This document shows positions 2,909 through 24,137 of a stretch of 64,000 bases of DNA, in pieces; position 1 is the stretch's first letter, and each line of letters opens with the position of its first letter. The notes under the pieces are model-generated. The model was not told the origin of the DNA. It worked only from the letters and a program-made list of their open reading frames with translations, and made no database searches. The translations under genes and the position numbers were made by a program. The stretch spans positions 186,001 to 250,000 of the IMG/VR virus record IMGVR_UViG_3300041411_000129; one strand, given 5' to 3'.

Positions 2909-3349
2909 ATGGGGAAATCCATCATGAGTACATTGATGCCGGAGCGTTTCTACACGCACCGAACTCTTGGCAAGATGTCGCTGTTCATCATGACCAAGTA
3001 TGACGGGAAGAACGCAGATAAGATCGAAGCTATGCTTACGAATCTGTGCCCTCAGTACTCGGGTAATATCAAGAGCGGTTATAACCTGCCTGATCGCCGG
3101 CTGTTCTTGCATACTGGTGATTACCTGACCTTCTCGTACGCGACTGGGTTTCAGGTATTCAGCGAGAAAGAGATCGAACGCAACTTCAACAAAGAACCGA
3201 TCCTCACTCGCCGTGCAACCTACTGGCTGGCTGGCTTCGTAGTCGTACTTGCTATCGCCGCCGCAGTTGTCTGGCAGATGTACGATTACGGTATTGGTTG
3301 CCCAACTCCTGCTGAGGTTAACCAGCAGGTAGGGACTATCTTCAAATGA
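2909..3349 (+). CDS. Hypothetical protein with C-terminal TM helix
   Basis: WLAGFVVVLAIAAAVVW. Confidence 0.75.
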   Translation: MGKSIMSTLMPERFYTHRTLGKMSLFIMTKYDGKNADKIEAMLTNLCPQYSGNIKSGYNLPDRRLFLHTGDYLTFSYATGFQVFSEKEIERNFNKEPILTRRATYWLAGFVVVLAIAAAVVWQMYDYGIGCPTPAEVNQQVGTIFK

Positions 3350-3423
3350 TCGCAATCTTCTAAACACAGCGCTCATCAGCGGAAACGTTGATGGGCGTTC
3401 TTTACTGCCATACGGGAGGATTT

Positions 3424-3789
3424 ATGCCTTACGACATAGTCAAGCAAAACTTGACGAGGTTAGGCACGTTGACCGGAGGTAAGTTAGGCGCCATCGACGT
3501 TATACGCGAATTGAAACAAGGTGGTTTGAGCATCTGGCTTTCTGACGATGCGCTTAACTACACGCGGCATTCGCTGCACGAATATAAGTACGCTGAACAA
3601 GTAACTGACGATCGGATCATTCTGTCCTGGCTGGACCTTCCGCCGTACCAGATTGGCATTCGCAGTCATTTCTATCTACATTCGGCGGCTGGCTTTTTGA
3701 TGTCCGCAATGAGCGATTGGCCTATGGGCTTTCGTGCTTTAATGATTCGCAAAGCTGAACAAGCACTCCAACTTTACGACAACAACTGA
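3424..3789 (+). CDS. Hypothetical protein
   Basis: GGGAGGA SD before ATG 3424. Confidence 0.7.
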   Translation: MPYDIVKQNLTRLGTLTGGKLGAIDVIRELKQGGLSIWLSDDALNYTRHSLHEYKYAEQVTDDRIILSWLDLPPYQIGIRSHFYLHSAAGFLMSAMSDWPMGFRALMIRKAEQALQLYDNN

Positions 3790-3807
3790 TTATTAAGGAA
3801 ATACCGC

Positions 3808-4902
3808 ATGGCTCGTAAAACTGTTCCGACCACATCTCAGGATAACACCAGTTTGAACCTCACCCTTGACCCAAACGATAAGCAGCCGGTCAAGACTGTC
3901 AAGGCCATCGCCAAAGCAGCGACTAAACCAGCAGCGAAGAAGCCTGGACCTAAACCCGGCGCTAAAGCCGCGGCTGCTAAAGCGGCTGTCAAGCCGGTTG
4001 TCGAGAAAGCAACCCGTAACATCGGTGAAGCGGAGGTTGGTCTGAAAACTAGCCTCGATGATCTGCCGAAAGGTTTGACCGACATCCTGCCGGATGCGAT
4101 GTTGGAAATCCTCGATACCACCAAGGGCGATGCCAAGGTCGTCAACTTCGGTGTAGGCACTCTGCCGAATGATCTCGGCTTCGTCCGCGTTTACGCTGAA
4201 GATAAACTGGTGACGATTACCGATCCAGAACATCTACCGCGTGGTTGGGTCACTCTGGAATCGAACAAGACCCTCGGGTCGAAAGTGTTCTACATCCACA
4301 CGACGAAACTGCCAGGTCACCCGCAAGAAGGCGAATACACCACTGCCCTGCGCAATGCGTACGACGTGGCGATCAGCGAAGCTCTGCGCGATGCTGGCTA
4401 CAGTGATTTCATCCCAGCCGCTGTTGCAACTATCGGCGTGGTTGAAGAGTTCAATCCAATGCTGGTAAATATGGAATCTATCCATAGTCGTCTGCGCCGC
4501 CAGCGTCGTCCTGATCAGCAGTACCTCACCCGCCCTATCGGCGAACACTACAACCGCAACACCATGTCGGTATTGACCCGCAATGGTGAAACCGACTACA
4601 TGTTCGTTCTCGATAACCTGATGGAAGTCAACACTTCCCGCGCCGCAGTCAATCAGGCAATCGAACGGGGTCATCAACTGGTGATCGTAACTATCGGCGA
4701 GCGTAGCTTCACTGCCGCTGTGACTTTGGAAAGCTATCCAATCTCACTCAACACGTTGAACCAAACACTGCTGCTCGAATACCTCAACGATGCGGTACGT
4801 GCATTGTTGGTAACGGCATGGTTTGACAAGATGATCACCGATGTGGTTGTCACCGAGTTCAATACCAAGTTCGCCTACGTCACAACCGCACCAGCCGCTT
4901 AA
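3808..4902 (+). CDS. Hypothetical protein with Lys/Ala/Pro-rich N-terminal tail
   Basis: KAATKPAAKKPGPKPGAKAAAAKAAVKP; AAGGA SD. Confidence 0.85.
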   Translation: MARKTVPTTSQDNTSLNLTLDPNDKQPVKTVKAIAKAATKPAAKKPGPKPGAKAAAAKAAVKPVVEKATRNIGEAEVGLKTSLDDLPKGLTDILPDAMLEILDTTKGDAKVVNFGVGTLPNDLGFVRVYAEDKLVTITDPEHLPRGWVTLESNKTLGSKVFYIHTTKLPGHPQEGEYTTALRNAYDVAISEALRDAGYSDFIPAAVATIGVVEEFNPMLVNMESIHSRLRRQRRPDQQYLTRPIGEHYNRNTMSVLTRNGETDYMFVLDNLMEVNTSRAAVNQAIERGHQLVIVTIGERSFTAAVTLESYPISLNTLNQTLLLEYLNDAVRALLVTAWFDKMITDVVVTEFNTKFAYVTTAPAA

Positions 4903-4993
4903 CCGGTATACCCCACGCCAGCAGTTAGGGCGTGGGGCTACATCTACATTTTAATTTTTGTTTGTAGTAACTTTTATTAAGGGGAACTTAACA

Positions 4994-5794
4994 ATGACTC
5001 AGGCTCCACGTCATAGACCGCAGTACATCTTCAGAGTCGTCCACAAGGCCAGTGGGTACTATTTCATGCAGATTGGTTCCATCCAGTCAGTCAACATGGA
5101 CTCTATCGTCAAGCGTGTGCATGACGCGGCTGCGTTGGGACCTAAACGTACTATCGTCAATTACCCGTTGAAAGACTTCGGTGATCGCTGGGCTCCACTG
5201 AGTGTAGGGGACTGGGAAGTCTTCGGTGGGGATATCGCTTATCAGAACTTCGATTCCGCTCTGGAAGCTGCGCGACTTTACGTGACTGAATCTGATACAG
5301 GTAAGTTCCTGCTGAGCAGCAACGTTTTCGAACGCCACGAATGGCCAGCTTACAAACCTGCTAAAGAACGAGTAGTCAGTCGTCATGCTGCTCAGGCTAT
5401 CGCGCATACGGCGTCCACTCCACTGGCTGCCCTGACGTGGTTTGGCGATATCAAACGTTCTTACATTGAAAGTGGGATCGTGACTTGTACGAAAGGTGTG
5501 GATGGCAGCCTGGTAGTCTGGACGATGGGTACATCGCTTACAATGCTAACCCCTGACATCGAAGAGCAGTCCAAGAAATGTGCGGCTGCTGGAAAGATCG
5601 TGATGATTTCGGTATATCTCGATCTGGTGTTCAAGGATACTAGGCGTTTCCATTCAGGTAACGTGATAAAGCCAGTGAAGTTTGCACACTTTGCTCCATC
5701 GATTACGATGGCTATGGCTGAGTTACGCGATCTGGTCAGAGATATCCAACTGACACATACTGGCGACACTGATTATCCAGAATACAAGCATTAA
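4994..5794 (+). CDS. Hypothetical protein
   Basis: AAGGGGAA SD before ATG 4994. Confidence 0.8.
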   Translation: MTQAPRHRPQYIFRVVHKASGYYFMQIGSIQSVNMDSIVKRVHDAAALGPKRTIVNYPLKDFGDRWAPLSVGDWEVFGGDIAYQNFDSALEAARLYVTESDTGKFLLSSNVFERHEWPAYKPAKERVVSRHAAQAIAHTASTPLAALTWFGDIKRSYIESGIVTCTKGVDGSLVVWTMGTSLTMLTPDIEEQSKKCAAAGKIVMISVYLDLVFKDTRRFHSGNVIKPVKFAHFAPSITMAMAELRDLVRDIQLTHTGDTDYPEYKH

Positions 5795-11981: not shown

Positions 11982-12070
11982 GAGACTGTAGCACAGTGTT
12001 AGTGCGATCAGCAGGCGTGGTAATTCTCGTCGGCTGGAATGCGTGGGTTCGATTCCCAACGGTCTCACCC
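11982..12070 (+). ncRNA. tRNA-like RNA with expanded anticodon arm
   Basis: GAGACTG/CGGTCTC acceptor, GCAC/GTGC D stem, TTCGATT T loop, 20-nt insert in anticodon arm, ends ACCC. Confidence 0.7.
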
Positions 12071-12106: not shown

Positions 12107-12781
12107 ATGTCTGTTGATATCAGTAACTATCTGATCGCTACACCACTTCCAGTATCTGAAACCAATCCAGTCGCCTTAGAGCTGCTTGGATCTCTGGCAT
12201 TGATTCAATGTCCTGAGGTTGTTTCTCAGCTGGAAGATGGGTCTGTTCAATTCACCGCACCTACTAAAGGTGCGTCCAGTAAGAGTACTCACCGTACTCG
12301 CACTGAATGGAAAGAACCTGAGTACTGGGCGTTGTCTAGTGCAGCTAAGCACTGGAGTCGCCAGACGATGACTGTTACTAAAGTCAACTCTGCTCAGAAG
12401 GTGGTGGTTGCACAGATTCACGTCAAGGATGCTACAACGCCTCCTTTGAAAGTGTTCTGGAACAAAGGTAAGTTGACGATGGGTTTCCGCGGTAGTTTCG
12501 CCGATCCTACAATCGTTAACTATACCCTCCATACCGACGTACCCTTGGGCGTTCCGTTCAAGATCAGTATCGGTGTGACAGCCAGCGGTTCGGTGTCTGT
12601 CAACGCATCATGTCAAGGGGTTCCTTCCCTAAAGAACGCGTTGAAGTTGAGCAGCACTTGGTTTGACCGCGTACTTCAGTTCCATGGCGGCGTCTACAAC
12701 CAAGTCGACTACACCGATCTTACCTCTGACGAGGATGGTTCGATCTGCATTATCAGTGAGTTGTCTACAACTCACGAATGA
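12107..12781 (+). CDS. Polysaccharide lyase family 7 (alginate lyase-like)
   Basis: RTRTEWKE, QIH and QFHGGVYNQ match the three conserved PL7 strands; upstream part of the ORF-track call overlaps a tRNA-like RNA, so start set at ATG 12107. Confidence 0.85.
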   Translation: MSVDISNYLIATPLPVSETNPVALELLGSLALIQCPEVVSQLEDGSVQFTAPTKGASSKSTHRTRTEWKEPEYWALSSAAKHWSRQTMTVTKVNSAQKVVVAQIHVKDATTPPLKVFWNKGKLTMGFRGSFADPTIVNYTLHTDVPLGVPFKISIGVTASGSVSVNASCQGVPSLKNALKLSSTWFDRVLQFHGGVYNQVDYTDLTSDEDGSICIISELSTTHE

Positions 12782-12787
12782 TTCAAT

Positions 12788-12939
12788 GACTTCTATAGCT
12801 CAGTTGGTAGAGCGTCGTCACTCTCTTTAGGTCGCGGGTTCGAGTCCCGTATCCCCAGCAACGGGGATTAGCTCAGTCGGTAGAGCAGAAGAAAATTACG
12901 AGACGAAGGTCGTAGGTTCAATCCCTGCTAGAAGTCCCA
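12788..12939 (+). ncRNA. Nested double tRNA: outer cloverleaf containing a circularly permuted complete tRNA
   Basis: Acceptor ACTTCTA pairs with TAGAAGT at the end of the second unit; ATCCCC/GGGGAT hairpin; swapped anticodon stems TCGTC/GACGA and GAAGA/TCTTT. Confidence 0.85.
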
Positions 12940-12944
12940 ATTAA

Positions 12945-13020
12945 TGATGCAAGCCTGCGCCCGACACTAAGAGCCCGACGATAGTCATATAGCTCACTAC
13001 GTTGGCCGCAGGCGGCATCA
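12945..13020 (+). ncRNA. Rod-like spacer RNA A
   Basis: TGATGC/GCATCA, GCCTGCG/CGCAGGC, CCGAC/GTTGG, GAGC/GCTC, GAC-GATA-GTC. Confidence 0.6.
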
Positions 13021-13121: not shown

Positions 13122-13248
13122 GATTCGCATAGCTCAGTGGTAGAGCGCCCCCACAACGGTTCGACTCCGTACGCATCCATCCTTCGGTTTGGGTGTGACC
13201 TGGATAACATGGGGGAGGTCGATGGTTCAAGTCCATCTGTGAATCCCA
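13122..13248 (+). ncRNA. tRNA-like RNA (G-1:C73, CCA) with permuted T-arm/acceptor module in the anticodon loop
   Basis: ATTCGCA/TGTGAAT; CCCCC/GGGGG; inner ACGG-TTCGACT-CCGT plus CGCATCC/GGGTGTG. Confidence 0.8.
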
Positions 13249-13254
13249 ATTCAA

Positions 13255-13322
13255 TGATCCTTGCAGCGGCTGCGCCTGAGTAAATGCTGTCTTAACTTGA
13301 CGTTACGGCGTCAAGAGGATCA
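13255..13322 (+). ncRNA. Spacer RNA B
   Basis: TGATCC/GGATCA closing helix; TTGACG/CGTCAA hairpin. Confidence 0.5.
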
Positions 13323-13418: not shown

Positions 13419-13439
13419 TTTACCGCTTTACCGGTTTAT

Positions 13440-13572
13440 CCCTTGGTCAGCCGAAAGGGGCTGGGCGGCTATCTGTTCGATACGGTACGTGAGCGCTTTA
13501 GGCAGCTGGCCATAGGCCGCTCACGTTCGTCGTTCAGAAGCGTCGAGAGTTCAACTCTCTCACTCGGGGCCA
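13440..13572 (+). ncRNA. Third nested tRNA-like RNA
   Basis: Outer T arm GAGAG-TTCAACT-CTCTC, ACTCGGG-G-CCA end, TGGGCGG/TCGTTCA stem; inner TTCGATA loop plus CGTGAGC/GCTCACG helix. Confidence 0.65.
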
Positions 13573-13576
13573 TACA

Positions 13577-13714
13577 TGACTCCCTGTGGGACATAGGGGC
13601 TATAGCTTCGTTCGTGTTAGTTGTGTGTAGCGGTCTGCTCTGCGGAGCGCGGCCCAACATGGGAACGAGGGTTTCTGATTATCGCCGGGTGTTCGGTAAT
13701 CAGAGATGGAGTCA
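13577..13714 (+). ncRNA. Multibranched spacer RNA C
   Basis: TGACTCC/GGAGTCA closing helix; CTTCGTTC/GAACGAGG; TCTGATTATCG/CGGTAATCAGA. Confidence 0.6.
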
Positions 13715-13722
13715 ACATACAT

Positions 13723-13834
13723 GGCAAGATGATCTCTGCGAAGATGATCGGAGTACACTCTAGAAGAGTGACTTAACTAGTGCAGTTAAGGACCTAACCG
13801 TTACTGAGGTTCGATTCCTCGTCTTGTCTCACCA
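13723..13834 (+). ncRNA. Atypical type-II (Leu-like) tRNA-like RNA
   Basis: GGCAAGA/TCTTGTC acceptor, TAG in central hairpin, 7-bp variable arm, canonical T arm, TC-ACCA end. Confidence 0.55.
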
Positions 13835-13836
13835 AA

Positions 13837-13867
13837 CATAAAGCCCGGCATTCCGCCGGGCTTTATG
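13837..13867 (+). terminator. Terminator ending the RNA cluster
   Basis: CATAAAGCCCGGC/GCCGGGCTTTATG, 13-bp stem. Confidence 0.8.
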
Positions 13868-13892
13868 CTGTCACTAACTAAACTGAAGAGAA

Positions 13893-21412: not shown

Positions 21413-22261
21413 ATGCTCTGCTGCTACCACGCCCACTGTGTTGATGGTTTGGTAAGTGCTTGGGTAGTATCCAAGTTCGCTACCAAAGAAAAGATCGAAG
21501 ACATTCGTTACGTGCCATGCGTTTATAACGATGGCGTTGTTCCTGAAGTGATCAAGGGCGAGACTGTCCTGATCGTTGACTTCTCTTTCGATCCTGAAGT
21601 TCTGGTCGAGATGTGTAAGGTTGCCAGGGCTGTGGTTCTGATTGACCATCACGAATCGGCCATCCGGAAGATCTGGGCGTACTTCGACAATCATCCGATC
21701 CCACGTAATCTGGATTTGCGGCTGAACGAGAAACTGTCTGGCGCAGGTGGTACATGGAACTTCCTATTCCCAAGCGCTGCGATGCCGGTCATGGTGGCTG
21801 TTGCTCAGGACTACGATCTGTGGTTGTTCAACTACCCACATACCCGCGCAGTCATGGCCGGTATCAAGGGTAAACCTCAGACCTTCGAAACACTGGATTG
21901 GGTAAGTCACAATCTGGACGACTGTATCGCTCTGGGTCAACCTCTCGTAGATAAAGAAGACGAGATGATTGCGACCCACGTCCGTGATGCGGTCATGGTG
22001 GAGTTCGAGGGTTACACCGTCCCTATGGCCAACGTACCTCGCTACATCCACAGCCTGGCTGGTCACGAGTTGGCTAAGAACAATCCATTCTGCATCACGT
22101 ACTTCGATAACGGTACTGTACGTGAGTTCAGTCTGCGCTCCAATCGCGAAACCGGCCTGATCGTCAATACCCTCGCCGAGAAGTACGGTGGCGGTGGACA
22201 CCCCCACGCTGCTGGCTTCCGTGTACCTCTCCCTAACCCGCTTGAAGGAATTAAAGCATGA
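21413..22261 (+). CDS. DHH/DHHA1 phosphoesterase (NrnA/NrnB-like)
   Basis: YHAHCVDG, IVDFS, IDHH, GGGHPHAAGF. Confidence 0.9.
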   Translation: MLCCYHAHCVDGLVSAWVVSKFATKEKIEDIRYVPCVYNDGVVPEVIKGETVLIVDFSFDPEVLVEMCKVARAVVLIDHHESAIRKIWAYFDNHPIPRNLDLRLNEKLSGAGGTWNFLFPSAAMPVMVAVAQDYDLWLFNYPHTRAVMAGIKGKPQTFETLDWVSHNLDDCIALGQPLVDKEDEMIATHVRDAVMVEFEGYTVPMANVPRYIHSLAGHELAKNNPFCITYFDNGTVREFSLRSNRETGLIVNTLAEKYGGGGHPHAAGFRVPLPNPLEGIKA

Positions 22262-22973: not shown

Positions 22974-24137
22974 ATGTCTTTGGTAATTGCTGACGAAGGT
23001 CCGTTCATCAAGGTTGATCACATCAACTTCAAGAATCGCATCGAGAAGATTCCTGGTGGCGTTTACAAGGTTGGTGTCGTTGACGAAGAGCCGGTCCTGG
23101 TAAAGGATCGCGAGAAGTTCGATCTTCCGAAACGCATCTACGGTAAACACGAAGCTTACAAGAACGCTGTAGTTCGTAAGTTCCGTGAAACCAAAGGTAC
23201 GCTCGGCGTACTGATGGACGGCCTGAAGGGTACTGGTAAGTCGTTGCTGGCTGAAGGTATCTGCAACAAGCTGATCGAAACCGACATGCCGATCCTGCTG
23301 GTATCGGACTCCGTCTCGCCGTCGTTGCTCAAGCACTTCATCGAAGCGATGGGTCCATGCGCGATCTACTTCGACGAGTTCGGCAAGTTCTACAAGGAAG
23401 AAGCTCGTGACAAGATGCTCACGCTCTTTTCCGACTCCAGCCTGAAGCAAGTCATGTTCATCGTGACATCGAACCACACCGGCGAACTGACGGACGCCAT
23501 GGTTCACCGTCCTGGCCGTTTCTTCTACAAGTTCAACTACAAAGGCTTGGAAGAAGAAGAGATCCTCGAGATCATCGAAGACAACAAGATCGAACCCGCG
23601 GTCTTGGCGTACATGCTCGACTACTGCAAGTATCACCAGTGCAGCTTCGACGTGGTGCGTGTCTTGATCGGTTGCGCATTCAACATGCCGACTGTCGAGA
23701 AATACATCGAGGAACTGAAGATCCACAACGTTCCTAACCAGGTATACACGCAGTACCGTGTATCTGAAGTGATGTACAAGGGTGATAAGTTCGAAGGCGA
23801 CATCACTGTCTCCGAAGAGAACGGTATCCTGAAGATCGCTCTGCGTGACAAACTCACGACGGACGTGATCGAAGAATGCACCTTCGAATGGACCAAGGCT
23901 GATAAGGTTCCACTCGGCAAGGGCGGTACTGAATATCGCATCAAGCTGTCCGACACATTGACCGTCAAGATTGATCGTACTGTATCGAGTTGGAAAGCCA
24001 ATGGCGTCGTACTGGATCTGCCGATGAGCTTCGAGAAAGGTGCTGGTCGCGGTTTAAAGCGCCAACGCCGCCGTGGCTTCGGCGAAGGCGATTACCCCCA
24101 GGGTCATCCTCTTCACGATGGTGACGATGACTGCTAA
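22974..24137 (+). CDS. AAA+ ATPase
   Basis: GLKGTGKS, IYFDEFGK, IVTSN, HRPGRF. Confidence 0.9.
   Translation: MSLVIADEGPFIKVDHINFKNRIEKIPGGVYKVGVVDEEPVLVKDREKFDLPKRIYGKHEAYKNAVVRKFRETKGTLGVLMDGLKGTGKSLLAEGICNKLIETDMPILLVSDSVSPSLLKHFIEAMGPCAIYFDEFGKFYKEEARDKMLTLFSDSSLKQVMFIVTSNHTGELTDAMVHRPGRFFYKFNYKGLEEEEILEIIEDNKIEPAVLAYMLDYCKYHQCSFDVVRVLIGCAFNMPTVEKYIEELKIHNVPNQVYTQYRVSEVMYKGDKFEGDITVSEENGILKIALRDKLTTDVIEECTFEWTKADKVPLGKGGTEYRIKLSDTLTVKIDRTVSSWKANGVVLDLPMSFEKGAGRGLKRQRRRGFGEGDYPQGHPLHDGDDDC

What the first reader, a model, noticed from the sequence alone, without database searches (positions are those of the whole stretch)
12788..12939. Complete circularly permuted tRNA nested in the anticodon loop of another tRNA
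Read linearly this looks like two tandem broken tRNAs, but every helix pairs crosswise. Outer RNA: G-1 at 12788, acceptor ACTTCTA (12789-95) with TAGAAGT (12929-35), C73 and CCA (12936-39); anticodon stem TCGTC (12815-19) with GACGA (12902-06). Inner RNA: TCTTT (12824-28) with GAAGA (12888-92); T arm GCGGG-TTCGAGT-CCCGT; acceptor ATCCCCA (12851-57) with CGGGGAT (12862-68) joined by a GCAA loop, with a C1:A72 mismatch; D arm GCTC/GAGC. The order is A5'-B3'-B5'-A3'. The two anticodon stems meet through small bulges. Removing 12821-12895 would leave an outer loop A-T-TAC-G-A with U33.
Basis: partly seen in the sequence, partly recalled or inferred. Interest (0 to 1): 0.92.

Follow-up and report, generated by a model that had tools for sequence, protein, structure and literature searches.

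The report
Phage tRNA-Val with nested tRNA-like insert
In a jumbo-phage tRNA cluster, a valine-type tRNA gene has its anticodon loop interrupted by a complete, back-to-front tRNA-shaped domain; this is real, conserved in related phages, and belongs to an undescribed family of interrupted phage tRNA-Val genes whose processing is unknown.

Summary
Window 12788-12939 folds as one RNA. The outer part is a tRNA body: an acceptor stem extended by G-1:C73, a D arm, a 5-bp anticodon stem, a T arm and an encoded CCA. Its anticodon loop carries a 75-nt insert, which is a permuted tRNA core: T arm, a 7-bp acceptor helix capped by GCAA, and a D arm.

It is not a misassembly or a one-off. Orthologues from independent metagenomes and distant copies, including cultured Burkholderia phage FLC9, keep all eight helices. 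In five genomes 208 of 210 pair cells are canonical and 23 pair positions show compensatory changes. The linear-tandem pairing sits at chance.

ARAGORN in intron mode calls it tRNA-Val(UAC) with a 75-nt intron. A second interrupted tRNA-Val(AAC) lies at 13122-13248.

I found 24 such elements in 8 phage genomes. All read N-A-C in the anticodon register, with inserts of 11-109 nt on the 5' side of the anticodon.

The inner domain matches the tRNA-like module of the bacterial Y RNA YrlA (40.9 bits, below Rfam's threshold). It cannot be a second decoding tRNA.

The best reading is an intervening tRNA-like domain in a phage tRNA-Val precursor. A stable two-headed tRNA mimic remains a serious rival. 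"Enigmatic" tRNA introns of Lak megaphages are the only precedent I found.

The parts
12788..12795 (+). G-1 (12788) and outer acceptor 5' strand ACTTCTA (12789-95)
   Evidence: Pairs with 12929-36. 35/35 canonical cells in 5 genomes, and 4 of 7 positions show compensatory changes.
12798..12813 (+). Outer D arm (GCTC-AGTTGGTA-GAGC)
   Evidence: Invariant in relatives.
12815..12819 (+). Outer anticodon stem, 5' strand TCGTC
   Evidence: Pairs with 12902-06. UA>CG and CG>UG changes in L121. 25/25 canonical cells.
12820..12894 (+). 75-nt insert (ARAGORN 'intron' at tRNA position 32), made of the 5' junction ACTC, the permuted tRNA-like domain and AA
   Evidence: aragorn -i. The boundaries can shift by 1 nt, because 12820 and 12895 are both A.
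12824..12828 (+). Inner 'anticodon stem', 3' strand TCTTT, followed by variable loop AGGTC (12829-33)
   Evidence: Pairs with 12888-92. 24/25 canonical cells, and all 5 positions show compensatory changes.
12834..12850 (+). Inner T arm GCGGG-TTCGAGT-CCCGT
   Evidence: Matches the T arm of the YrlA model.
12851..12868 (+). Inner 7-bp acceptor-like helix ATCCCCA / CGGGGAT closed by GCAA (12858-61), with a C:A mismatch next to the loop
   Evidence: It is 7 bp long in the six members where I counted it: window, L122, L121, L227, L282 (34/35 canonical cells, 7 of 7 positions with compensatory changes) and FLC9-a (read by eye); L382 looks like 8 bp. The closing loop is 4 to 30 nt in relatives.
12871..12886 (+). 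Inner D arm GCTC-AGTCGGTA-GAGC, preceded by the U8 A9 equivalents at 12869-70
12888..12892 (+). Inner 'anticodon stem', 5' strand GAAGA
12895..12901 (+). Outer anticodon loop ATTACGA, with anticodon UAC at 12897-99, U33 at 12896 and G37 at 12900
   Evidence: A35 and C36 are in the same register in all 24 family members I read.
12902..12939 (+). Outer 3' half: anticodon stem GACGA, variable loop AGGTC, T arm GTAGG-TTCAATC-CCTGC, acceptor TAGAAGT, C73 and CCA
13122..13248 (+). Second interrupted tRNA-Val(AAC). The outer tRNA again has G-1:C73 and CCA. The 51-nt insert (13153-13203) is a T-arm-like hairpin plus an 8-bp hairpin with a UUCG loop. The loop is ATAACAT at 13204-10.
   Evidence: Rfam tRNA model gives 48 bits across the insert. 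aragorn -i calls Val(aac) with a 51-nt intron. Orthologues are in L121 and L122. Distant copies are in L227 and L282.

Best explanation
Window 12788-12939 is one gene for a 152-nt structured RNA in the tRNA cluster of a jumbo phage (IMG/VR contig of 254 kb).

Shown:
- The outer part is a tRNA body of valine type: anticodon UAC in the normal register, an encoded CCA, and an acceptor helix lengthened by G-1:C73.
- Between nucleotides 31 and 32, on the 5' side of the anticodon, sits a 75-nt insert that folds on its own into the core of a second tRNA in permuted order. The order is anticodon-stem 3' strand, variable loop, T arm, a 7-bp acceptor helix capped by a tetraloop, D arm, anticodon-stem 5' strand.
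- This is the design of the tRNA-like domain of the bacterial Y RNA YrlA.
- Both layers are kept by selection.
- The element belongs to a family of at least 24 insert-bearing tRNA-Val-type genes in 8 phage genomes. Their inserts range from 11 to 109 nt and vary in fold.

Inferred:
- It is co-transcribed with the neighbouring tRNAs and trimmed by RNase P at the outer 5' end.
- The insert is an intervening sequence. It is neither a group I intron nor a bulge-helix-bulge intron.
- Protein enzymes must cut it out and reseal the anticodon loop. That would take an endonuclease and an RNA ligase of the phage or the host.
- The product would be tRNA-Val(UAC). Together with the neighbouring tRNA-Val(AAC), it would serve the GUA/GUG and GUU codons that the phage uses heavily.
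- The L-shaped insert would act as a folding or recognition handle for tRNA-binding enzymes.
- The inner domain is not a second decoding tRNA.
For: Structure: with the figures given under the observation check.

Valine-type outer tRNA with an excisable insert:
- aragorn -i calls Val(tac) with intron (32,75) and Val(aac) with intron (31,51).
- In-silico excision gives tRNA-Val calls for every family member tested.
- The Rfam tRNA model spans the second element at 48 bits.

Family:
- 24 elements in window, L122, L121, L227, L282, L236, L274 and FLC9 all read N-A-C two nucleotides before the outer stem.
- The search patterns contained no anticodon information.
- N34 differs among paralogues, as it does for isoacceptors.
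- Insert fold and length vary widely while the outer tRNA stays constant. The window and L122 outer halves are 100% identical, yet the inner acceptor helix is replaced. That pattern is typical of intervening sequences.

No ordinary tRNA-Val:
- None is present in any of these clusters.
- None is present in the whole FLC9 genome.

Codon demand: in the window's ORFs GTT is 28% and GTA 20% of Val codons, at 50% GC.

Context: same strand and the same flanking spacer motifs as the neighbouring tRNAs.

Precedent: Lak megaphage tRNAs have 'enigmatic introns', one of which is itself predicted to be a tRNA (10.1101/356790).
Against: - No splicing machinery for such inserts is known in bacteria or phages.
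- There is no bulge-helix-bulge motif (by inspection), and no ribozyme or group I match in Rfam.
- No RNA ligase, RtcB or endonuclease was recognised among the 40 window ORFs scanned. The rest of the 254-kb genome was not visible.
- Across the family U33 and a purine at 37 are not conserved. About 10 of 24 elements have a pyrimidine at 37, so many excised products would be non-canonical. The two window elements would be canonical.
- C73 in all el1-type members, and G-1:C73 in the window clade, is the bacterial tRNA-His identity mark. It fits badly with a Val anticodon.
- FLC9 has three of these elements beside only eight ordinary tRNAs. L227 has four and L282 five, although only part of those two genomes was seen. 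That is more than decoding needs.
- No insert-free allele of either outer tRNA exists in IMG/VR or GTDB genomes.
- The elbow of the insert (T loop, D loop) is conserved between distant phages. This suggests the insert itself is functional.
Confidence: 0.45

Rival explanations
1. The RNA is never spliced. The mature product is the full-length two-headed tRNA mimic, possibly opened by RNase P in the inner acceptor loop, as happens to M. smegmatis YrlA. It would act by mimicry. The outer part would present an aminoacylatable or synthetase-recognisable tRNA end, with A35 and C36 as ValRS identity elements. The inner L-shaped domain would bind a second tRNA-binding factor. The RNA would then work as a decoy or sponge for host tRNA-targeting defence nucleases, or as a Y-RNA-like scaffold.
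For: - The inner elbow and the 7-bp acceptor length are conserved with compensatory changes in distant phages.
- The inner domain resembles YrlA's tRNA-like domain. That domain is modified by tRNA enzymes and, with a 7-bp stem, is cut by RNase P and receives CCA in vivo (PMC4201824).
- No insert-free alleles were found.
- U33 and R37 are relaxed while A35 and C36 are strict.
- The acceptor end is odd: C73, or G-1:C73.
- Each genome has several paralogues.
- Phage tRNAs are known to evolve to evade anticodon nucleases (PMC10264068).
Against: - The insert fold is not constant. In the same genomes it can be a plain hairpin or an 11-nt palindrome, so a specific second 'head' cannot be the general requirement.
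- A decoy of host tRNA-Val would not need AAC and CAC variants.
- No partner protein was identified.
Confidence: 0.32
2. It is a split or permuted tRNA pair. The junctions are cut and the halves re-ligated (inner circle, outer exons). RNase P and a 3' processing enzyme open the inner acceptor loop. The locus would then yield two functional tRNAs, as for the permuted tRNA genes of Cyanidioschyzon merolae.
For: - The order is 3' half then 5' half, with a closed acceptor.
- The 7-bp inner acceptor fits RNase P's measuring rule (PMC4201824).
Against: - Only 4-7 unconserved junction nucleotides would form the inner loop. L227 has 11 junction nucleotides in total for two loops.
- There is no discriminator or CCA after the inner acceptor, and no bulge-helix-bulge motif.
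- In the orthologues the closing loop is a 30-nt hairpin.
- Paralogues lack a D arm or any tRNA-like shape.
Confidence: 0.07
3. It is a true member of the YrlA family, a Y RNA that binds a phage or host Ro60/Rsr protein. The outer tRNA would stand in for the Ro-binding stem.
For: - Rfam YrlA (RF02553) is the best family match: 40.9 bits, E = 6.7e-8 over 12803-12919.
- Some jumbo phages encode TROVE proteins (PMC7824862).
Against: - The score is below the gathering threshold of 69, and the match is carried by the T arm, acceptor and D arm module alone.
- In the Rfam alignment, four pairs in the model's two outer stems are flagged non-canonical.
- There is no GNCGAA(N)G motif on the 5' strand.
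- No TROVE hit appeared among the 30 largest window ORFs or the neighbouring ORFs.
Confidence: 0.05
4. It is a dead locus or an artefact: two tandem tRNA genes scrambled by rearrangement or misassembly, or a tRNA gene disrupted by a selfish tRNA-derived insertion and now decaying.
For: ARAGORN in standard mode and Rfam with gathering thresholds find nothing here.
Against: - The same architecture appears in independent assemblies and in a cultured phage.
- There are 23 pair positions with compensatory changes.
- The outer halves are 100% identical between genomes whose neighbouring lyase gene is 81% identical in protein.
Confidence: 0.02

Closest known systems
'Enigmatic' introns in tRNA genes of Lak megaphages (Devoto et al., bioRxiv 10.1101/356790)
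   Same: Both are large-phage tRNA genes interrupted in the anticodon region by short inserts that are not group I introns and have no known splicing mechanism. One Lak intron, in tRNA-Thr(TGT), was itself predicted to encode a tRNA. The authors suggested that such introns are common in large phages.
   Different: - Lak introns were placed by eukaryote-mode tRNAscan, and insert-free alleles exist.
- Here the insert lies 5' of the anticodon (31/32 to 33/34) and no insert-free allele was found.
- Here the isotype is almost always Val.
- Here the nested unit is a permuted, closed-acceptor tRNA-like domain.
- The hosts differ: Pseudomonadota jumbo phages here, Prevotella there.
- Whether the Lak nested tRNA is permuted could not be checked, because no supplement is held.
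tRNA-like domain of the bacterial Y RNA YrlA (Rfam RF02553; Chen et al. 2014, PMC4201824)
   Same: Both have the same module order: T arm, acceptor-like helix closed by a loop, D arm, all borne on a stem that corresponds to the anticodon stem. The conserved tRNA tertiary-interaction nucleotides are present (U8, A14, G18 G19, T54 T55 C56, and the 15:48 pair). YrlA is the best Rfam hit.
   Different: - The module sits on a complete tRNA body instead of a Ro60-binding stem.
- The score is below the family threshold.
- No Rsr/TROVE gene was seen nearby.
- It lies in a tRNA gene cluster.
Circularly permuted tRNA genes (Cyanidioschyzon merolae; Thermofilum pendens), from my own knowledge and the review PMC4090602 listed
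   Same: The 3' half is encoded upstream of the 5' half, and the acceptor ends are joined by a short linker.
   Different: - Those are stand-alone genes processed through a bulge-helix-bulge motif and a circular intermediate into a decoding tRNA.
- Here there is no such motif, no usable inner anticodon loop, no discriminator or CCA, and the unit is nested inside another tRNA.
Group I introns in bacterial and phage tRNA anticodon loops (PMC3984707, listed)
   Same: Both interrupt the anticodon loop of a bacterial-type tRNA gene.
   Different: By my own knowledge, group I introns are at least about 200 nt with a conserved catalytic core. These inserts are 11-109 nt, have no Rfam intron match, and one of them is a tRNA fold.
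Engineered 'tRNA scaffold' RNAs, in which cargo is inserted in place of the anticodon loop (my own knowledge)
   Same: A tRNA body carries a foreign structured RNA at its anticodon stem, which gives tRNA-like processing and stability.
   Different: This one is natural, is conserved in phages, and keeps the anticodon-loop nucleotides 3' of the insert.

Membership tests
YrlA / bacterial Y RNA (RF02553) | Score at or above Rfam's gathering threshold (69 bits) | tested here: not met
   40.9 bits, E = 6.7e-8.
YrlA / bacterial Y RNA (RF02553) | tRNA-like domain: T arm, loop-closed acceptor helix, D arm | tested here: met
YrlA / bacterial Y RNA (RF02553) | Ro60-binding stem formed by the 5' and 3' ends, with GNCGAA(N)G on the 5' strand | tested here: not met
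   The ends form a tRNA acceptor stem. The motif is absent from the 5' strand. Four pairs in the model's two outer stems are flagged non-canonical in the alignment.
YrlA / bacterial Y RNA (RF02553) | Encoded next to an rsr (TROVE/Ro60) gene | tested here: not met
   No TROVE hit in the flanking ORFs or in the 30 largest ORFs of the 64-kb window. The rest of the genome was not visible.
Circularly permuted tRNA genes | 3' half upstream of 5' half, with the acceptor ends linked | tested here: met
Circularly permuted tRNA genes | Bulge-helix-bulge motif at the termini for the splicing endonuclease | tested here: not met
   The junctions are ACTC and AAATTACGA. No 3-4-3 motif can be drawn (inspection).
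Circularly permuted tRNA genes | A functional 7-nt anticodon loop after joining the termini | tested here: not met
   4-7 unconserved nucleotides remain.
Archaeal/eukaryal protein-spliced tRNA introns | Bulge-helix-bulge motif, or the canonical 37/38 position | tested here: not met
   The insert is at 31/32, and there is no such motif.
Group I intron in tRNA | Catalytic core (P3-P9), about 200 nt or more | tested here: not met
   The insert is 75 nt and folds as a tRNA. There is no Rfam intron match at E up to 10.
Insert-bearing ('intron-containing') tRNA genes of large phages | A complete tRNA body whose anticodon loop is interrupted by a short insert that is not a group I intron, in a phage tRNA cluster | tested here: met
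.
Insert-bearing ('intron-containing') tRNA genes of large phages | The insert is removed from the RNA (true intron) | not testable with these tools
   This needs RNA data.
tRNA-Val | A35 and C36 in the anticodon register (the main ValRS identity elements, from my own knowledge) | tested here: met
   UAC at 12897-99. All 24 family members read NAC.
tRNA-Val | A73 discriminator and no G-1 (my own knowledge of the E. coli identity set) | tested here: not met
   C73 is paired with an encoded G-1, which is the bacterial tRNA-His mark.

The most novel reading that the evidence does not exclude
Jumbo phages of Pseudomonadota have a protein-dependent way of handling tRNA-Val genes that carry a structured, sometimes fully tRNA-shaped, domain 5' of the anticodon. 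There are two forms of this reading. In the first, it is a new bacterial or phage tRNA splicing pathway: cutting directed by tRNA-binding enzymes, then sealing by a phage or host RNA ligase. In the second, it is a new class of stable two-headed tRNA mimics with a chargeable Val/His-marked end and a second tRNA elbow, used against host tRNA-targeting defences or to recruit tRNA-binding proteins.
Probability: 0.35. Interest if true: 0.9.

Novelty: new variant of a known kind. Interest (0 to 1): 0.75.

Why it matters
Bacteria and their viruses are thought to lack protein-spliced tRNA introns. The only tRNA introns accepted there are self-splicing group I introns.

Here a conserved family of phage tRNA-Val genes carries short structured inserts, one of them a full tRNA-shaped domain. 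There are two ways to read that. If the inserts are removed, an unknown excision and ligation pathway exists, and a cultured phage (FLC9) makes it directly testable. If they are not removed, this is a new kind of tRNA-mimicking RNA built from two tRNA bodies.

It also links the tRNA-like domain of bacterial Y RNAs to tRNA genes, which may bear on how such mimics arise.

On the practical side, standard tRNA finders miss these genes, so tRNA repertoires of large phages are under-counted.

Tried and rejected
- **Standard finders.** ARAGORN in standard mode and Rfam at gathering thresholds find nothing at the locus.
- **Phage collection searches.** Megablast against 50,697 phage records gave no match. 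Distant blastn with the element alone returns only tandem-tRNA look-alikes such as T4-type His|Arg.
- **Psa21.** Pseudomonas phage Psa21 shares the neighbouring lyase gene but not the element.
- **Motif scans.** These were YrlA-like hairpins, tandem tRNAs and 'mini' tRNA-like genes. The family census is therefore a lower bound and not a frequency.
- **My generic scanner.** It gave false positives from tandem tRNAs with similar acceptors (L353, L385).
- **aragorn -i over all loci.** It is too permissive for a census and mis-assigns some members.
- **Insert-free alleles.** The search found none.
- **Origin of the two tRNA bodies.** The inner and outer bodies are not specifically similar to each other or to any of about 950 ordinary tRNAs in the fetched loci.
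- **Protein scans.** Pfam and PHROG scans of 40 window ORFs and 10 ORFs of related loci gave no RNA ligase, RtcB, TROVE or tRNA endonuclease.
- **Promoters and terminators.** The consensus scan was uninformative.
- **Structural motifs.** I looked for bulge-helix-bulge, kink-turn and known ribozyme readings of the junction and rejected them on inspection and on Rfam.
- **Lak supplement.** The Lak paper's supplement is not held, so I could not see its nested tRNA.
- **Covariance model.** I did not build one, because MAFFT misaligned the distant members. I counted pairs on hand-parsed segments instead.

Full report
**What is there**

Window 12788-12939 lies in a same-strand cluster of small RNA genes, directly after a PL7 polysaccharide-lyase gene (12176-12781). 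The cluster holds tRNA-Asn, Ser, a doubtful Leu, Asp and Tyr. The window is part of a 253,921-bp IMG/VR contig. That contig is a jumbo phage distantly related to Pseudomonas phage Psa21.

The thermodynamic optimum of the 152-nt stretch is the nested double cloverleaf. Standard tRNA finders miss it.

**Is it more than chance or an artefact?**

Two orthologues come from other metagenomes: L122 (a 13-kb contig) and L121 (a 188-kb contig). They keep the architecture while differing in sequence.

- RNAalifold predicts the nested fold from the alignment alone, with six compensatory pairs.
- The pair count gives 99.2% standard pairs, against 40-51% for slid partners.
- More distant copies exist in L227 and L282, in cultured Burkholderia phage FLC9 (LC667451.1), and probably in L382.
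- Over five genomes the nested model has 208/210 canonical cells and compensatory double changes at 23 of 42 positions. That includes all 7 positions of the inner acceptor and all 5 of the inner 'anticodon' stem.
- Pairing the halves as two linear tandem tRNAs gives 30/120 canonical cells, which is chance level.

Misassembly, a one-off rearrangement and a decaying pseudogene are therefore excluded.

**What the two layers are**

The outer layer is a tRNA. With introns allowed, ARAGORN calls 12789-12939 as tRNA-Val(tac) with a 75-nt intron at position 32. The remaining loop, A-U-UAC-G-A, is canonical.

The inner layer matches Rfam's YrlA model best (40.9 bits, E = 6.7e-8, below the gathering score of 69). 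YrlA is a bacterial Y RNA. Its tRNA-like domain has this same order: T arm, loop-closed acceptor helix, D arm. It is handled by tRNA enzymes. The M. smegmatis version, with a 7-bp stem, is cut by RNase P and receives CCA (PMC4201824).

Here the module sits on a whole tRNA rather than on a Ro60-binding stem. No TROVE gene was seen in the window. It therefore looks like YrlA's domain but is not a member of that family.

**The inner unit is not a second decoding tRNA**

- Its acceptor is closed without a discriminator or CCA.
- In L121 and L122 the 4-nt cap is replaced by a 30-nt extension hairpin.
- Between the window and L122 the outer halves are 100% identical, yet the inner acceptor helix is a different sequence of the same 7-bp length.
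- The junction nucleotides left for an inner anticodon loop number 4-7 and are not conserved.

**A family**

A second element lies 180 nt downstream (13122-13248). It is a tRNA body, again with G-1:C73 and CCA. Its anticodon loop carries a 51-nt insert made of a T-arm-like hairpin and a UUCG-capped hairpin.

- The Rfam tRNA model spans it at 48 bits.
- ARAGORN calls it Val(aac).
- It too has orthologues and distant copies.

Reading the fetched loci, I found 24 insert-bearing elements in 8 phage genomes:

| Genome | Elements |
|---|---|
| window | 2 |
| L122 | 2 |
| L121 | 2 |
| L227 | 4 |
| L282 | 5 |
| L236 | 4 |
| L274 | 2 |
| FLC9 | 3 |

In all of them the five bases before the 3' strand of the outer anticodon stem read N-A-C-N-N. 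The search patterns held no anticodon information.

- N34 is A in 8 elements, U in 7, C in 7 and G in 2.
- Inserts are 11-109 nt and always lie 5' of N34.
- The inserts fold as an 11-nt palindrome, a plain hairpin, a T-arm plus hairpin, or a full tRNA-like domain.

The three exceptions in related loci read CAT (L125, L136) or perhaps TGC (L382).

No ordinary tRNA-Val was found in any cluster. FLC9 has none in its whole genome. It has only eight canonical tRNAs, all in the one cluster that holds the three elements. No insert-free allele of either window element exists in IMG/VR or in GTDB genomes.

**How it most likely works**

I favour an intervening sequence in a tRNA-Val precursor, with confidence about 0.45. 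The reasons are:

- The outer body is a constant tRNA while the insert varies.
- A35 and C36 keep the anticodon register.
- N34 varies among paralogues, as it does for isoacceptors.
- There is no ordinary tRNA-Val.
- The phage uses GTT and GTA heavily.
- Both window elements would have canonical loops after excision.

The steps are inferred, not shown. They are co-transcription with the cluster, RNase P cleavage at the outer 5' end, excision by a protein endonuclease, and sealing by a phage or host RNA ligase. The L-shaped insert would serve as a folding or recognition handle.

There is evidence against this reading:

- No such machinery is known or was seen.
- U33 and a purine at 37 are not kept across the family.
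- C73, and G-1:C73 in this clade, is the bacterial tRNA-His mark.
- There are more paralogues than decoding needs.
- Insert-free alleles are absent.
- The insert's elbow is itself conserved.

These points feed the main rival (about 0.32): the full-length RNA is the product. It would be a two-headed tRNA mimic, acting as a decoy for tRNA-targeting defences or as a Y-RNA-like scaffold. RNase P might open it in the inner loop.

The other readings are unlikely. They are two functional tRNAs from a permuted pair (0.07), a true Ro60-binding Y RNA (0.05), and an artefact or pseudogene (0.02).

**Comparison with what is known**

The only precedent the paper library shows is the Lak megaphage report of 'enigmatic' tRNA introns. 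It includes a tRNA-Thr intron itself predicted to be a tRNA, and the remark that such introns may be common in large phages (10.1101/356790).

The present case differs in five ways:

- The insert lies 5' of the anticodon.
- The isotype is almost always Val.
- The nested unit has a permuted, closed-acceptor design.
- No empty alleles were found.
- The host range differs.

It fails the defining tests for permuted tRNA genes, bulge-helix-bulge introns, group I introns and YrlA. I therefore file it as a new variant of a known but unexplained kind.

**Limits**

- Several family members were parsed by eye.
- Only 64 kb of the 254-kb genome could be read.
- No RNA data exist.

Noticed in passing
window 12945-13020 and 13255-13322: Two very stable stem structures lie in the spacers before tRNA-Asp and tRNA-Tyr (z = -5.9 and -3.3). 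They share their ends (UGAUNC...GNAUCA followed by CCC). They look like a small family of processed hairpin RNAs. They have no Rfam match.
   Followed up: partly
window 13432-13578 and 13723-13834: The cluster holds two more structured RNAs. One is a 147-nt RNA (z = -4.1) with a T-arm-like hairpin and a 3' ...GGGG-CCA end. The other is a tRNA-like RNA with acceptor GGCAAGA/TCTTGTC, a T arm and ACCA. ARAGORN misses the second one, and Rfam tRNA-Sec gives it only 19.6 bits. A GC-rich hairpin followed by TTTAT at about 13842-13870 probably ends the transcription unit.
   Followed up: partly
window 11982-12069: ARAGORN calls a tRNA-Leu(cag) with the anticodon at position 28, and Rfam gives it only 38.6 bits. 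This is an abnormal tRNA and may be another non-standard member of the cluster.
   Followed up: no
window 12176-12781: An alginate/PL7 polysaccharide-lyase gene sits inside the tRNA cluster. This linkage between lyase and tRNA cluster recurs in many related jumbo-phage contigs and in Psa21.
   Followed up: partly
L236 (rc 3240-4290), L274 8810-9100, L319 (FLC9) 2440-2905: In this clade the outer acceptor stems of the insert-bearing Val-type elements carry a conserved 1-2-nt bulge in the 3' strand. Some are 8 bp long including a -1:73 pair.
   Followed up: no
Many IMG/VR loci (for example L210, L212, L213, L244, L258): These are 'mini' tRNA-like genes with an acceptor stem, a D arm and a T arm. 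Only about 11 nt stand where the anticodon arm and variable loop should be. They recur in unrelated viral contigs.
   Followed up: no
L004, L054, L040, L057, L243, L017: Other phage tRNA genes carry 40-140-nt inserts on the 3' side of the anticodon, like the canonical 37/38 position. This is a different class from the one studied here and may be the Lak-type introns.
   Followed up: no
L119 (Psa21) 4550-5368: An 820-nt unannotated gap lies downstream of the lyase gene. It ends with what looks like a lone tRNA-Leu 5' half (about 5320-5345), just before the annotated tRNA-Leu.
   Followed up: no
L127, L137, L274 and the elements themselves: Anticodons with A at position 34 (AAU, ACC, AUG, AAA, and AAC in the Val-type elements) are unusually common in these jumbo-phage clusters. 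This could point to A34-to-inosine editing, or to non-standard tRNAs.
   Followed up: no
L227 8368-9093 and L282 754-1473: A ~240-aa protein with a crAss001_48-related domain (PF21825) is encoded inside the cluster, between Val-type elements, in both distant genomes. L282 also shares the DHH and AAA genes found downstream in the window (21413-22261, 22974-24137).
   Followed up: partly
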